A stretch of 64,000 nt of DNA from Diadema antillarum. Its lineage: Eukaryota. Of this stretch, positions 44,024 through 59,590 are shown in pieces (position 1 is the stretch's first letter; every line of letters starts with the position of its first letter). Position numbers and translations under genes: made by a program. The notes below the pieces were generated by a model. That model was not told the origin of the DNA. It saw nothing but the letters and a program-made list of their open reading frames with translations, and did not search any database. Where the stretch lies: contig NW_027271283.1 in assembly GCF_040938485.1 (NCBI RefSeq), positions 1,426,001 through 1,490,000 on the forward strand. The letters run 5' to 3'.

Positions 44024-47000
44024 GTAAGTACAATAAATCCGATTTTTAAGCTTTATTTGATGGTAATGTCTAGTAACTGGCATTAGCATCATACATGCCC
44101 TTTTGGCCTTGATTGCACTGCACTGGCCACTGCAATGTCAATGAATGCGCTGCTAGCTAGTTGAGAATCTAGACTAGTCTATGCTCTAACGTTAGAGAGG
44201 TCATGTTGCTGATGATGTATGATCTTGATAGTGACGTTGTTTTGTAGCCGGGTCAAGTCCAAGTTGAAGTTGAGTCTGGAATCTAGTTTCTTATTATATT
44301 TCTTGTGGTAAGCAGTAAGTTTTAACTATGTTTTGTTGATAAGAAGTGGAAGCGACATCATGCGTCATCATCACTCAGCTCAGTAGGCTACATGTAGTGG
44401 CAATGTGTGGGCAGGATCCAACATGAAATGTCCAACTCTCCCACTTTTGCCATCGCATTATTGGGGGATCTCCCACCGAAAGGGGATCTACAAAAGTCTC
44501 CCGTTGTCCCGCTTGAGTTTAAATTTCTCCTGTATTTATGCTTTGAATAGAACGAAACAAAGAAATTAAAAAATGAATAGCTCTTTAGCAGGCATTACCA
44601 GTAGGGGTGCTGGTCCGAGAATGAGGATCGTGTTTGTATATGAGGGTCGTCTTCGTATACGGTGACGACGTCGCAAGCTGCCGACTTCTCGGCGAACGGC
44701 GTCCCGATAAATGAGGACGCGTCCTTAAAAAACCGATATAAGCTTAGAAAACTATGATTGTCCCCAAAAGTAAGGACGCAAAAGCGCGACTGTTGATTGC
44801 TTCTTGCTTTGACCCTCGTAAATAAGGACGATGTGCAATAAACAGAGATCACTGCTTTCCCCGTTTTCTGTGTGCCCATGCATATGTTTTGTTGTAAGTT
44901 GAAGCTGACATACATGTAATACATGTATGATATGGGGCTATCTCTATAATACACTGTACAAACGTAATATAGGTACCTTGTACCGCTGCATGCTGCGCAT
45001 TGCGACATCAACAAGTCGAGCAAATTTTGCATTTCTAGGACCAATATGGATCGAGTGTTATTAGGGAAATGCTCTTCAACCTAAATGTGAGTATCGATGT
45101 CCTACTATCATTGTGATGTTTATACAGCTACAGGCATAACATTGTACCTACAATTGTAGATCTATGTAAAATTTAGAAGATCTCTAGATCTAGATGAGCT
45201 TGGATTCGTGGACATTTCAGGATATACTGTAAATTGTGAATAATTCTTGCAAGCGGCCTATTGTAGCATATTGACTTGTATGTGAAAGGCAGATGAGTTT
45301 CACGTCAGTTTACGTCTATCATTTAATTACATGTACTACAATTTTTAATTGAAAACGACACACATTTAGTATTTTCCATTCAATGTTATAGCGCTGACGA
45401 AACCTGCATGTATTAGAAGTCTTGTGTGGGTATGCATGTGTAAATGTGGGTGTTTAAGAGTAGTCTGTATACCCAAATGCCAGGAAATTGTTATCATACA
45501 TCAAGAACAAACAACAAACAAAACAAGCGCCAAGAAATCAGGTACCGGTACCAATTAATCACAAACACACACACACACACAAATCTTCACATTTTATTGC
45601 CAATTCTATAGACAAAAAAATCAGCTTTTAAACAAAAATAGGCACAGGTATCACAGTACACGATACATGCATGTATCCTTTCTGTGCTGACGATAATGCT
45701 ATAGACTAGAATTATAATACAAAAAAAAGACTAAAAGCCTAATTACATTGTACGCCTAGAATAATGAAACATTCAGCAGTAAGATAACGTACTGGAAAGC
45801 AAAAAAAAAAAAAGAAAAAAAAGAGAGAGAAACAAATAGATAAGTGACAATTTAAGCATAACAGACATAAGGCCAAGTAAAAAAAGAAACCAGTTTCTCG
45901 TCCTCGCGCGCATCGATTTTGGCCGCCGCATCGAATTTTTTACTATTTACTATTTTCAAAATGGCGCTGAAAATACCAAGAAATTCATATTTCTCGTCCC
46001 AGCCCGCTCCCCGCCCGCATCGATTTTCAGTTGCCGCATCGACTCTTTTGATATTTACTATTTTTTCGGCCGCCGAAAAAAAAAAGAAAAGATCGACAAT
46101 TCACCTACCAATCGTGACGTCTCATTTCTAATTTTTACGCCTTGCGTCCTCTACTTAGCTGTAGACTGTAGTACAGCTGTAGCTTCTGTGTGTAGTGCGT
46201 ATGTAATAACGCATGCATTTCACACTGCGAGCTCGGCCGATCGGCAAGAAGGAATGACCCACAAAGCAGTCGAACTGCACTGTAGTCGGATGGGCGGCGC
46301 GGCGGGCCGGCCTACAGGGCTGTGATGTACAGCGCACTCGGTACGTCGTGAACGCGATAGCGGCAACATTTTTGCGAACAATCGCTGATATTCCACGCAT
46401 ATTTCGCGCATTGTTCGTAGTTTTCCCCGTTTCTGATATTTTAAGCGGATGAATTGTACTGTACAAATGCTTGTGAAGATTGTACGGTATCGAGTTTGTA
46501 TACATTTTCATGTCATTGTGACTATGTGCATGTGTGTGCAGTGTCGGAAGGTACGGTGCCAGTAGGGAGGTCCACACCTCCCTGGTGCCAGTGCAGTGGC
46601 CGTGCCCAGCGTTGCCAGGTCCCAACGGAACAAAATCACCAAAAGGCCTGTGAAAAATCACCAAAAACCACAAAAAATCACCAAATCTGAGAAAATGTTT
46701 TTTCTCGAAGTTTTTTTTTTTAATTGATTTTTTTTTAAGTTTTTTTTTTTATTTTTTAATCTTTTGGCATATAGGATCAATGAACTTCCAAGGGAGTTCA
46801 AGCTGTGGGAGCTGCTGCTGCTGCTGTAGGTGTGTATAGATAAAAAAATTAGCGTACGCGCAGGTTTTTGCGCATGTCCTTTTCAGCATCCGAGATTTTG
46901 CGAGATATTCAGAGATGGAAAGCATGGTCGACGAGATTCACTTGTTGACGACATGAAGATCTATTAGCCGTGACCAGTGCCGTATATACGGCACTGGCCG

Positions 47001-47334
47001 TGACTAATTGACATGGTTTGTGAATATTTAGCCAATACGGTCTGGACTTGTATATCTTTTGTGTCTAAACTGAGACTAATCGCGACACAACGATCTCGCG
47101 GACTAGATCATGCATTTGGGTGCAAACGCCATCTCAAGTGGGCTAGCTTAGTCTGCATTCAAGGCAGCGGAGGCATTATTCAAAGACTCAGTATACCCAC
47201 ACTAATGCGCGTGTTCATGCGTGTATGGGTGGAAATGAGCTGCTGGCTTGACAGAGGTCTGCGCTCTAACAGTGCTTTTTTTTCTATATCGTTCATAAAA
47301 ACATACATTGTGTACATTCATTGATCTTGCTCTA

Positions 47335-47598
47335 GCGATCCACGTCCCACAAGCTTTGCTTTTTAGTGGATCACTATTTTCATATCGAATCTATTTTCCG
47401 CACGCCCACGAAGTATCCTCCTCGTATATATATATATAAATATATGTTGTTATATAATTTATCTCGGATACTACATGAATCTTTTGCAAATCCTTAATGT
47501 TTGAAAAATATCATTTCATGACATGTATACTTTGTACTATGTTTTGATTTTCGTTGATCGGAAATAAACTATGATTGAATTGAATTGAATTGAATTGA
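47335..47598 (+). mobile_element. 3' end fragment of a CR1/L2-type LINE inserted in the hAT
   Basis: ACAAGCTTTGCTTTTTAGT motif shared with the LINE 3' UTR at about 54696; AATAAA followed by an (ATTGA)n tail; left boundary approximate. Confidence 0.7.
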
Positions 47599-47677
47599 AA
47601 AAATACAACCACTTACCTTCATGTTGTAGGGAACGTAACGTACTGATGCGCATCTGTTTACTGCATACACTTGGAAG

Positions 47678-57015: not shown

Positions 57016-57414
57016 TATCTTATAATATGGCCTAATGCAAGTTCCCTGAAACGCAGAGCGATTTCTATTTAAACCCACAAAAATGTGATGCGTTCTTCAA
57101 CAAAGAGACGCTCGCTAAATTTTTCTTATGCTGAAGTCATACTGTATATCGTAAGCGTCCCGCATTTCGTTATAGGGCCTTATAGAATAAATTTCGTTCA
57201 TTTTTCTTTTTCAATGTCGCCCGGAAATTACTTCGTTCAATCGAAAATTTAGCTATAAACGTTTTACTTTTGAGTGACTCAATGATGTTTATTTTTAGAT
57301 CTTAATTTTTTCATGTGCTTCGACGTTGTAACAATATGTCGTTCGTGGTAACGCAAGTGCACCGTATCAGCTCCTCTTGCCAACGCAACATGCAGAATCA
57401 TTGTTGAGCATTAA

Positions 57415-57499
57415 CCCGTTGAGGACGAGTCCCGAGTATACTCGGGCAGGTGTCTACGGGAAACGCGTGTTGTAGCAAAATCAAACCGTCCTCAACGGG
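57415..57499. mobile_element. 85-bp piggyBac-type MITE
   Basis: TTAA TSD on both sides; 13-bp TIR CCCGTTGAGGACG; internal palindrome CCCGAGTATACTCGGG. Confidence 0.9.
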
Positions 57500-59590
57500 T
57501 TAATAATGATTCAGGGAAGAGTGGAGAGCCTATTTCAGGGCTACCATTATCCTACACATCGTACGATCTTACCTTGCTCAACTTCCATTGTGCTGTTGGG
57601 ATCTGTGCCATAAGACAAGGAAAGAAAATATATCCAAAACTGTTAAGAAATGTTCCAGTTTCACAGAGAGAAATACAAATATGCAGTGTGATATTAATAC
57701 TGAATTAGATTGGTAGCAATATATCAATGTTACTTTTATGTGTAACGTTGCTTACCTTGTTCGTTTTGGCCTTCATTACGCAACTCCTTCATTTCCTGAA
57801 TGTGAACATCGCATCAGTTCTTGGAGGTCATCTTTATGAAATTAACAGATGTAGTTTGGTTAGTATACATGTACTTGCATCTAGATTCAAACAGAATTGA
57901 TGTGGCACACGTGTAACACTTCTAAAGAAGTACGCATGTAATCTGTTTCTGCTTATGATGCGCTTATGATGCAATAACCAATAAAACAAATGTGATATCA
58001 TCATTCACTGACCAATTAATGAAGCATGCGTGTGGGCCATCATGTGAGAAGTTCTGGTAACTTTTCTTACCATAGCACATGGCCTCTCCCCTCACTTGAC
58101 TCCACGATGACGGGCGTGCTACCGCCGGACCTACAGGTGAGAGCTCACCCTCGAGTCATAGATATTACAATGATTCATAAAATGTTTGGTTAAACTATCA
58201 GCACTGCATACTCTATAACTGTAGTGAGACCAGTCTTTAAAATTGCTGCAGTACTCGCTTACGGGAGCCATTTTCAAGTTTATTTTATAAATCATTTGAT
58301 TATAAGGATTTTAAAAATGGGAATATCATTTAGATGCGATCGAAAGAAGTATCTTTGATAATTTCGTTTCCACTGTTTCACAATTATTTTTTTCGTTTGT
58401 TTTTGTTTTGTTTTGTTTATAGAGTTTTGTTTCTAGTTTTATTCAACCGTTCCTTGAATATTAAAGCACTTCCCGTTTTGTTTGTGATTATTTAAATGCC
58501 CGTGTGTATGCATACATTATACATGGGAAACTAGCGTCGGCAGCTGCGCACGTGCAGTCGGACATACATTACTAGTAAGTAGTTTTCAACACAACGATGT
58601 GTTCACAACGGGATTTGTAGGTACCGGCATACAGTCGCCAAACCAGACAATCGGAAATCGGAATATTAATTAACAATAATTAGAATTAATATTTTATCAA
58701 TAAGAAATATTCATACCGTTCAAATTTGCCATAATTCCACTGCAAAGTGCATTGGTGACTTCGTAGGTGTGTTAAGTTGCTCCATGATGCGTGTACATGT
58801 ATTGCCATTGACAGCACAGCGACTTTCACATTTCGCGCGATAAATCCACGGGAAGACGGACAACCCACAAAAGTAGACGGTGAACTAGGGGTATTTGTAC
58901 ACGAGGAATCCGTTTATCGCATGTAGAACGTGCGGTTCGGTACCCCTAAGCCCGCAAAGCCCCGAGGAAAAAGTTCGTCCGCGAAAAAGCTACCGATCCC
59001 GATTTTCGCGGACGCGATTTGTCCGCGTTTACGAAGATACCCTCGTTTGTGCGGACGATCCGCATTCTCGGACCAGCACCCCTACTGATTACTATAGTAA
59101 TACTGATCATGATAGTGATGGGATGGAACATTTGCATGCATCCCATTGACCACTGATGGTGACCGTACACTACACAGTGTGTTACTGCATCATATTTGCA
59201 CTGTCCTCAACAAGTACATCTAACTTTTTACAGTACAGACCACAGTTGCATTCACTGCACACACATAAATATTGACACAAGATTTTACCAGAGATGCCAA
59301 AATCAGATAGCAGCTCAAAAGCTCAGCGTGAGATTTTGCATGTGATCCATGACATTGAAGGCTTGAGTAAAAGCTTGTAAGGCGTGTGAACGCGAGAAAT
59401 CCCCAGTGGTGCGAGTTTCACACTAGATGGCATGAGACTTGGTACAGTGTACATGTAGGTCAGCATTACTGCAGCAGCAAATGCAGATACTTGTTGAACC
59501 ATCAGTCACATGTGAACAGATCTACTATGCATGCATACATTTTCAATTGAATTGTATTTAACAACCCCATATCTATAAAAATGTAACACA

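What the first reader, a model, noticed from the sequence alone, without database searches (positions are those of the whole stretch)
44599..59087. 14.5-kb cargo-carrying TIR transposon with 5-bp TSD and no visible transposase
Seen: 33-bp TIRs 14.5 kb apart (first 25 bp perfect), exact ATTAC duplication and subterminal motif arrays. After removing nested TEs, about 4.3-5.2 kb of native sequence remains, with spliced exons on both strands pointing inward. Established: CA..TG termini with 5-bp TSDs fit hAT5 or Transib/RAG-like elements, and ProtoRAG carries two convergent genes. Inference: this may be an uncharacterised two-gene or gene-capturing element family. CAGTAGG differs from the CAC heptamer, and I see no RAG1, Transib or hAT catalytic motifs in the native part.
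Basis: partly seen in the sequence, partly recalled or inferred. Interest (0 to 1): 0.8.

Follow-up and report, generated by a model that had tools for sequence, protein, structure and literature searches.

The report
Polymorphic non-autonomous transposon full of transposons
This 14.5-kb stretch is a real mobile DNA element, present in one chromosome copy of the sea urchin Diadema antillarum and cleanly absent from the other, but its "cargo" is other transposons nested inside it, not genes, so it is an ordinary gene-less transposon of an unnamed family.

Summary
The 33-nt terminal inverted repeats (32/33 complementary, first 25 perfect) lie at 44599-44631 and 59055-59087, each flanked by ATTAC.

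The window is Diadema antillarum, from an assembly that keeps both haplotypes. The allelic contig runs straight from window 44598 to 59088 with a single ATTAC, so it is an exact empty site. The D. setosum orthologous site is also unoccupied. So 44599-59087 is one derived, polymorphic insertion.

- 64% of the element is a nested Harbinger-like element (45870-55116, TAA duplication).
- That element itself carries a 4,480-bp hAT (8-bp duplication, one base away from an intact copy) and a 5'-truncated LINE.
- The remaining 5.2 kb of native sequence holds two more small repeats.
- That native sequence has no Pfam domain, no called gene, no RNA family and no protein relatives.

It is therefore a non-autonomous cut-and-paste element moved in trans. 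The CAG...CTG ends, the apparent 5-bp duplication and the CpG-rich subterminal GGACG motifs point to the hAT5 group. Membership is unproven, because no other copy or autonomous partner could be searched for with these tools. Transib/ProtoRAG features were tested and not met.

In passing: the nested hAT is about 99.3% identical between two Diadema species whose neutral DNA is 75-86% identical.

The parts
44594..44598 (.). Left copy of the target-site duplication, ATTAC
   Evidence: The empty allele L009 has a single ATTAC.
44599..44631 (+). Left terminal inverted repeat of the outer element (starts CAGTAGGGGTGCTGG)
   Evidence: Imperfect similarity between the two ends continues to about nt 62.
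44599..45866 (.). Native left arm of the outer element. It is non-coding; the first ~250 bp are CpG-rich and carry 5 GGACG/CGTCC motifs.
   Evidence: The longest ORF (44595-45044, minus strand) has no relatives.
45870..55116 (.). Nested non-autonomous Harbinger-like element 'B' (9,247 bp; about 1.9 kb of its own sequence). TIR starts GGCCAAGTAAAAAAAGAAAC. Its TAA target duplication lies at 45867-45869 and 55117-55119.
   Evidence: (I2). A second copy with a TAA duplication lies in L009 (about 13591-18911) and is absent from the window at 33649/33652. No protein domain was found in that copy.
46607..51086 (-). Nested hAT element (4,480 bp) inside B. TIR CAGCGTTGCCAG / CAGTGTTGCCAG. Its 8-bp duplication GCCGTGCC lies at 46599-46606 and 51087-51094.
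   Evidence: Seven other copies elsewhere are 99.3-99.98% identical and are not inside the outer element.
47678..49639 (-). hAT transposase gene (653 codons: DUF4371, FAM200-ZBED5 RNase-like, hAT dimerisation domains). It is interrupted by one in-frame TAA at 48275-48277.
   Evidence: A single-base difference from copy L007.
52099..54976 (+). 5'-truncated LINE fragment inside B. RT ORF at 52109-54307; A/T-rich microsatellite tail.
   Evidence: RVT_1 E=3e-36. B is uninterrupted at this point in L009. Tail sequence.
55120..59087 (.). Native right arm of the outer element. It is non-coding; the last ~250 bp are CpG-rich and carry GCGGAC/GTCCGC motifs.
   Evidence: The most exon-like ORF (55631-55888, minus strand) has no real relatives.
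56329..57017 (.). Small foldback or tandem repeat block in the right arm: a 110-bp unit x2, and 42-nt inverted arms at 56385-56426 and 56976-57017.
   Evidence: (I1, I6).
57415..57502 (.). 88-bp piggyBac-like MITE: palindromic ends CCCGTTGAGGACG...CGTCCTCAACGGG, flanked by TTAA.
   Evidence: Copies in L002, L005 and L010.
59055..59087 (-). Right terminal inverted repeat of the outer element
59088..59092 (.). Right copy of the target-site duplication, ATTAC

Best explanation
Window 44599-59087 is one insertion of a non-autonomous cut-and-paste DNA transposon of an unnamed Diadema family.

A transposase encoded elsewhere in the genome recognised the 33-nt terminal inverted repeats, and probably the CpG-rich subterminal GGACG-type motifs. 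It cut the element out of a donor site and integrated it with a staggered cut at ATTAC. Repair of that cut produced the 5-bp duplication. The insertion is derived and still polymorphic: it is present in the window haplotype of D. antillarum and absent from the other haplotype and from D. setosum.

The element has about 5.2 kb of its own sequence with no detectable gene. The rest is a Harbinger-like non-autonomous element that landed in it (TAA duplication). That element in turn received a hAT (8-bp duplication) and a 5'-truncated LINE.

The most likely superfamily is hAT, in the hAT5 group that makes 5-bp duplications.

Shown here: the ends, the duplication, the empty site, the nesting order and the lack of coding signal. 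Inferred: mobilisation in trans, the role of the subterminal motifs, and the superfamily.
For: TIRs and ATTAC flanks.

Source: the window is contig JBFRCO010000395.1 of GCA_040938485.1, an uncollapsed diploid D. antillarum assembly (PMC13511894).

Empty site: on allelic contig L009, positions 1-1321 match window 60441-59088 and positions 1317-4221 match window 44598-41685. The sequence reads GCAGGC-ATTAC-TATAGT. The D. setosum orthologue reads GCAGGCATCAGTGATG with no insertion.

Nesting: the hAT has 7 independent copies outside this element and an 8-bp duplication. B has a second, independently polymorphic copy with a TAA duplication. The LINE interrupts B relative to that copy.

No coding signal in native DNA: 124 peptides show no significant Pfam hit; no gene except the hAT ORF is on record across window 38275-59639; word search gave nothing; a full HMMER search gave only spurious hits inflated by repeats; no Rfam or tRNA hit.

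Superfamily lead: hAT families with 5-bp duplications exist in invertebrates (PMC12730594; PMC9004415). CAG...CTG termini and subterminal repeat arrays are typical of hAT (my own knowledge). Motif enrichment.
Against: No second copy of this family and no autonomous partner was found, so the family and superfamily assignments rest on end features alone.

The terminus CAGTA matches the usual hAT YARNG pattern at 4 of 5 positions.

The 5-bp duplication is not formally separable from a TTA duplication plus one extra, mismatched terminal base.

Pfam scans of stop-to-stop peptides of 35 aa or more would miss very short exons or very decayed genes.

Three nested insertions in a polymorphic allele are many if they all arrived after integration. 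Part of the nest may therefore have travelled with the element; this was not resolved.
Confidence: 0.8

Rival explanations
1. It is a non-autonomous Transib or ProtoRAG-like element, moved by a RAG1-like/Transib transposase. Those also make 5-bp duplications, and echinoderms carry such genes.
For: The apparent 5-bp duplication. The host is a sea urchin, a lineage known to carry Transib and RAG-like genes (my own knowledge).
Against: The termini start CAG, not the CAC of the RSS-like heptamer. No A-rich nonamer sits at 12 or 23 nt from the heptamer position (sequence). No RAG1, RAG2 or Transib domain appears in the native arms or anywhere else in the window. No convergent gene pair is on record.
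Confidence: 0.08
2. It is a PIF/Harbinger-type non-autonomous element with a 3-bp TTA duplication. On this reading the true ends are one base further out (C-CAGTAGG...CCTACTG-A), and the ATTAC match is partly coincidence.
For: TTA sits at the centre of ATTAC, and the filled and empty sites are equally compatible with this reading. Harbinger-like elements are active here: B is polymorphic with TAA duplications.
Against: It requires a mismatched first base (C versus T) in otherwise perfect 25-nt ends. It also requires two chance flank matches, about 1 in 16. The end does not resemble B's GGCC-type terminus. No DDE_Tnp_4 or Myb-like ORF was found.
Confidence: 0.08
3. It belongs to an uncharacterised two-gene or gene-capturing transposon family whose spliced genes lie in the native arms.
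For: ORF-like pieces with plausible splice-acceptor context exist, for example 55631-55888 on the minus strand. Absence of homologues does not exclude an orphan gene.
Against: No gene is on record in the native arms in a collection that includes the RefSeq models of this assembly. There are no Pfam hits and no relatives among 5.8 billion clusters. In the 1.84-billion-protein library the three hits are to repeat proteins with several weak stretches; the top one, checked residue by residue, matches through a ~33-residue repeated unit. Most of the apparent 'cargo' is demonstrably other transposons.
Confidence: 0.04
4. It is not an insertion. The other haplotype lost 14.5 kb by a deletion between two ATTAC microhomologies.
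For: Presence/absence alone is symmetric. The haplotypes differ by many other indels.
Against: The break points coincide to the base with a 33-nt inverted repeat pair that occurs nowhere else in the window. The outgroup D. setosum also lacks the segment.
Confidence: 0.02

Closest known systems
hAT5 group of the hAT superfamily (Kapitonov & Jurka 2007, Repbase Reports; cited in PMC12730594 and PMC9004415)
   Same: An apparent 5-bp target-site duplication, CAG...CTG termini, short TIRs followed by subterminal short-motif arrays, an invertebrate host, and the existence of non-autonomous derivatives.
   Different: No hAT transposase or remnant lies in the native sequence. No autonomous partner with the same ends was identified. 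The fifth terminal base departs from the usual hAT pattern. Membership is not demonstrated.
Ds-type internally unrelated non-autonomous elements, and nested transposon clusters
   Same: Only the ends are shared with a presumed autonomous element. The interior is non-coding and serves as a landing pad for other transposons, giving layered insertions that each keep an intact duplication.
   Different: This one sits in a sea urchin and has a 5-bp duplication. Whether the nest formed before or after the last transposition is unknown.
Transib / ProtoRAG
   Same: 5-bp duplication; TIR-bounded cut-and-paste element; deuterostome invertebrate host.
   Different: CAG rather than CAC at the terminus, no heptamer/nonamer organisation, and no RAG1-like or RAG2-like genes.
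PIF/Harbinger non-autonomous elements (such as the nested element B)
   Same: TTA lies at the centre of the duplicated pentamer. The element is gene-less and polymorphic between haplotypes.
   Different: It needs a mismatched terminal base, and the end sequence is unlike B. The 5-bp reading is more parsimonious.

Membership tests
hAT superfamily, hAT5 group | 5-bp target-site duplication | tested here: met
   ATTAC lies on both sides and occurs once in the empty allele. Caveat: a single copy cannot exclude a 3-bp TTA reading.
hAT superfamily, hAT5 group | Termini of the hAT type (5'-YARNG...; short TIRs) | tested here: inconclusive
   CAGTA...TACTG matches 4 of 5 positions of the pattern as I recall it. 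The TIR is 33 nt. The pattern comes from my own knowledge, not from a tool.
hAT superfamily, hAT5 group | hAT transposase (RNase H-like DDE with insertion domain, C-terminal hAT dimerisation domain) in the element, or in an autonomous partner with the same TIRs | tested here: not met
   In the element itself, no hAT domain lies in the native arms, and tblastn with 120 hAT transposases finds nothing significant there. The only hAT gene belongs to a different, nested hAT with other TIRs and an 8-bp duplication. An autonomous partner elsewhere in the genome could not be searched for with these tools.
Transib / ProtoRAG | TIRs starting with the CAC heptamer, with RSS-like organisation | tested here: not met
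   The termini read CAGTAGG, and no nonamer-like A-run sits at 12 or 23 nt.
Transib / ProtoRAG | RAG1-like/Transib transposase (and, for ProtoRAG, a convergent RAG2-like gene) | tested here: not met
   No such domain appears in 124 native peptides or in the rest of the window. No genes are called there.
Transib / ProtoRAG | 5-bp target-site duplication | tested here: met
PIF/Harbinger | 3-bp TWA target-site duplication | tested here: inconclusive
   TTA is embedded in ATTAC. This reading requires a C/T mismatch at the first base of the TIR.
PIF/Harbinger | DDE_Tnp_4-type transposase plus a Myb-like gene | tested here: not met
   No hit in the native arms.
Polinton/Maverick (considered because of the 14.5-kb size) | 6-bp duplication, long TIRs, protein-primed polymerase and integrase genes | tested here: not met
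   The duplication is 5 bp and the TIR is 33 nt. The only protein domains found are the hAT transposase and the LINE RT of nested elements.

The most novel reading that the evidence does not exclude
Two novel readings remain open:
- The element represents a cut-and-paste family outside the described superfamilies that make 5-bp duplications.
- The whole 10-14.5-kb nest (outer element plus the Harbinger-like element and its LINE fragment) was mobilised as one unit, so one transposon ferried others.

Several layers of nesting in an allele that is still polymorphic hint at the second reading. They do not show it, because haplotypes here are about 5% diverged and differ by roughly one transposon-sized indel per 6 kb.
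Probability: 0.15. Interest if true: 0.45.

Novelty: new member of a known kind. Interest (0 to 1): 0.25.

Why it matters
It gives a base-exact, haplotype-resolved example of recent DNA-transposon activity in Diadema antillarum, a conservation-priority species. The outer element, the Harbinger-like element and the hAT all show signs of recent or ongoing mobility within about 60 kb. This helps explain why this genome is so heterozygous and hard to collapse.

It removes a candidate 'RAG-like two-gene element' from the list of echinoderm curiosities.

The by-product is probably more interesting than the finding itself: a hAT that is nearly identical in two Diadema species whose neutral DNA differs by 15-25%.

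Tried and rejected
**Other copies of the outer family**
- Exact TIR searches in the 10 Diadema loci fetched (about 235 kb) found none.
- A 21-mer scan of JGI metagenomes gave 0 hits.
- A 17-mer scan gave 59 hits, none of which extends into the rest of the TIR, so they are chance.
- A word search with the ORF that reads through the left TIR, hoping that other copies had been called as ORFs, found nothing.

**Coding capacity**
- Pfam scan of all stop-to-stop peptides of 35 aa or more in the native and B-native DNA.
- tblastn of 120 hAT transposases against the window with the nested hAT masked.
- Rfam, tRNA and tandem-repeat scans.
- The single big HMMER search, run on the most exon-like ORF, returned three hits to repeat proteins with several weak stretches each. 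The top one, checked residue by residue, matches through a ~33-residue repeated unit.

**Look-ups**
- An exact look-up of the LINE ORF from its first ATG was not on record.

**Rejected ideas**
- The hAT transposase as the element's own gene. It belongs to a separate element with its own TIRs and duplication.
- A composite of two short elements. There are no inner TIR copies.
- Polinton. Wrong duplication length, wrong TIR length and no hallmark genes.

**Steps deliberately not taken**
- Further random sampling of the genome through the remaining look-ups was not pursued, because the expected yield was too low.
- RPL18A was searched with one exon by reference. The database protein P0134 was used instead.
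- The interrupted hAT ORF was searched as two separate pieces.
- The window has no N runs and is not human.
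Full report
**1. Observation**

The two ends are as described. Arms 44599-44631 and 59055-59087 form a 33-nt inverted repeat with one mismatch. The first 25 nt are perfect and occur only at these two places in the window, even with three mismatches allowed; none are expected by chance. ATTAC lies directly outside each end.

The terminal 250 bp on each side are CpG-rich. Together they carry 8 GGACG/CGTCC motifs, against a window average of 0.34 per 500 bp, plus a 19-bp unit x2.1 just inside the left repeat. 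Imperfect similarity between the two ends runs to about nt 62.

**2. Source**

The window has no N runs, 38% G+C and CpG o/e 0.62. It is not human. An exact look-up of the truncated hAT ORF places window 38275-59639 on contig JBFRCO010000395.1 of GCA_040938485.1 at 100% identity. That assembly is Diadema antillarum and retains both haplotypes (PMC13511894). GCA_964275005 is D. setosum (PMC13264686).

**3. Empty site**

One exon of the neighbouring RPL18A/eL20 gene (window about 30-34.4 kb, minus strand) was searched by reference. The matching cluster contained the Diadema protein P0134. Looking up P0134 returned the allelic D. antillarum contig (L009) and the D. setosum orthologue (L010).

On L009, positions 1-1321 align to window 60441-59088 and positions 1317-4221 align to window 44598-41685. 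The other haplotype therefore reads ...GCAGGC ATTAC TATAGT..., with a single ATTAC and nothing in between. In D. setosum the site reads GCAGGCATCAGTGATG, again without an insertion, although that locus ends about 200 bp beyond the site.

So 44599-59087 is one derived insertion that is polymorphic in D. antillarum.

One limit applies. The filled and empty sequences are equally compatible with two readings:
- a 5-bp duplication with ends CAGTAGG...CCTACTG;
- a 3-bp TTA duplication with one extra, mismatched base at each end.

The first is more parsimonious, because it gives a perfect TIR from base 1 and needs no chance flank matches.

**4. Anatomy of the interior**

(a) A 4,480-bp hAT lies at 46607-51086.
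- Its TIRs are CAGCGTTGCCAG / CAGTGTTGCCAG and its 8-bp duplication is GCCGTGCC.
- Its 653-codon gene carries DUF4371, FAM200-ZBED5 RNase-like and hAT dimerisation domains.
- Seven other copies, none inside an outer-type element, are 99.3-99.98% identical.
- The window copy differs from L007 by a single base, which creates an in-frame TAA at 48275-48277.

(b) That hAT sits inside element B (45870-55116).
- B has 34-nt TIRs starting GGCCAAGT and TAA duplications.
- A second B copy with a TAA duplication lies in an RPL18A intron on L009. It is absent from the window haplotype at 33649/33652.
- B is therefore a Harbinger-like, gene-less element that is itself polymorphic.

(c) Relative to the L009 copy, B in the window is also interrupted at 52099-54976 by a 5'-truncated LINE. 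The RT ORF is at 52109-54307 (RVT_1, E=3e-36), and the fragment ends in a microsatellite tail.

(d) The outer element's own DNA is 44599-45866 plus 55120-59087, 5,239 bp in all. Within it lie:
- a foldback/tandem block at 56329-57017;
- an 88-bp piggyBac-like MITE at 57415-57502, flanked by TTAA, with copies in three other loci.

**5. Coding capacity of the native DNA**

None was detected.
- 124 stop-to-stop peptides of 35 aa or more gave no Pfam match better than E=0.008 before multiple-test correction, and none was transposon-related.
- 120 hAT transposases find nothing significant outside the nested hAT.
- The only gene on record across window 38275-59639 is the truncated hAT ORF.
- The longest native ORF, which reads out through the left TIR, has no relatives.
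- For the most exon-like ORF (55631-55888, minus strand), the 1.84-billion-protein library returned three hits to repeat proteins with several weak stretches each. The top one, checked residue by residue, matches through a ~33-residue repeated unit.
- There is no Rfam family and no tRNA.
- No transposase domain lies elsewhere in the window. The host genes are an ACADVL/ACAD9-like gene and RPL18A.

**6. Mechanism**

The element is a non-autonomous cut-and-paste transposon. It has inverted-repeat ends, subterminal motif arrays that are the likely transposase-binding sites (inference), a short target duplication from staggered cleavage, and no transposase of its own. Mobilisation must therefore be in trans (inference).

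Whether the nested elements arrived before or after the last transposition is open. The two haplotypes are only about 95% identical beside the site and differ by roughly one transposon-sized indel per 6 kb. Post-insertion nesting is therefore plausible. Three layers in one polymorphic allele would still be many.

**7. Comparison with known families**

Among the superfamilies I considered, 5-bp duplications fit Transib/ProtoRAG and the hAT5 group. hAT5 is documented in invertebrates (PMC12730594; PMC9004415).
- Transib/ProtoRAG features were tested and not met: the terminus is CAG rather than CAC, there is no heptamer/nonamer layout, and there are no RAG-like genes.
- hAT5 fits on duplication length, CAG...CTG ends and subterminal repeats. 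Its defining transposase is absent from the element, and a partner could not be searched for. The element works like a hAT5-type non-autonomous element, but membership is unproven; I put it at about 0.5.
- A Harbinger reading (TTA) remains possible at about 0.08.

**8. What could not be done**

No tool here searches the Diadema genomes by DNA. The 10 fetched loci (about 235 kb) and two metagenome scans gave no further copy. Copy number, the duplication consensus and the autonomous partner remain the decisive unknowns.

**9. Verdict**

The insertion is real, cleanly delimited and polymorphic. It is an ordinary gene-less DNA transposon colonised by other transposons, not a cargo-carrying or RAG-like two-gene element.

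It is a new member of a known kind, and interest is low to moderate. The nested hAT's near-identity between D. antillarum and D. setosum deserves separate follow-up. In the coding sequence there are 1-2 substitutions in 1,962 bp. In the 2.5 kb of non-coding sequence there are 0-3 substitutions per flank. Orthologous non-coding DNA of the two species is only 75-86% identical.

Noticed in passing
window 46607-51086; L003 8539-13022 and L005 8128-13049 (D. setosum); L001, L002, L004, L006, L007 (D. antillarum): The nested hAT encodes an identical 653-aa transposase in D. antillarum and D. setosum. Across the whole 4.48 kb it is about 99.3% identical between the species: 1-2 substitutions in the coding sequence and 0-3 per non-coding flank. 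Orthologous non-coding DNA around RPL18A is only 75-86% identical. This makes it a candidate for horizontal transfer or very recent shared activity. RefSeq names these copies 'zinc finger protein 862-like'.
   Followed up: partly
L009 about 13591-18911, against window 33649/33652: A second copy of the Harbinger-like element B (TAA duplication, about 90% identical to the window copy) sits in an RPL18A intron on the other haplotype and is absent from the window haplotype. B is therefore insertion-polymorphic too. About 4.1 kb of its interior (L009 14036-18182) has no counterpart in the window copy and no Pfam domain.
   Followed up: partly
window 15900-44598 and 59088-60441, against L009: The two D. 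antillarum haplotypes are only 92.8-99.1% identical across the main collinear blocks (about 95% beside the site). They differ by at least seven transposon-sized indels in about 45 kb, for example 3.5 kb at window 25092-28610 and about 0.9-kb repeats at L009 22346-23249 and 24313-25244.
   Followed up: no
window 57415-57502: An 88-bp piggyBac-like MITE with palindromic ends and TTAA flanks. Copies are present in D. antillarum and D. setosum loci L002, L005 and L010.
   Followed up: partly
window 37700-43650, minus strand: A run of broken ORFs on the minus strand, and a tandem array at about 39973-40687, lie just left of the insertion site. One peptide from the scanned flanks (30-44.6 kb and 59.1-64 kb) hit RVT_1, but I did not locate which one. 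If it lies in this run, this is probably a decayed LINE.
   Followed up: no
window 24285-24559 and 42115-42437: A repeat of about 300 bp is present twice in the window and in most fetched Diadema loci at 67-83% identity. It is a common short interspersed or MITE-like family.
   Followed up: no
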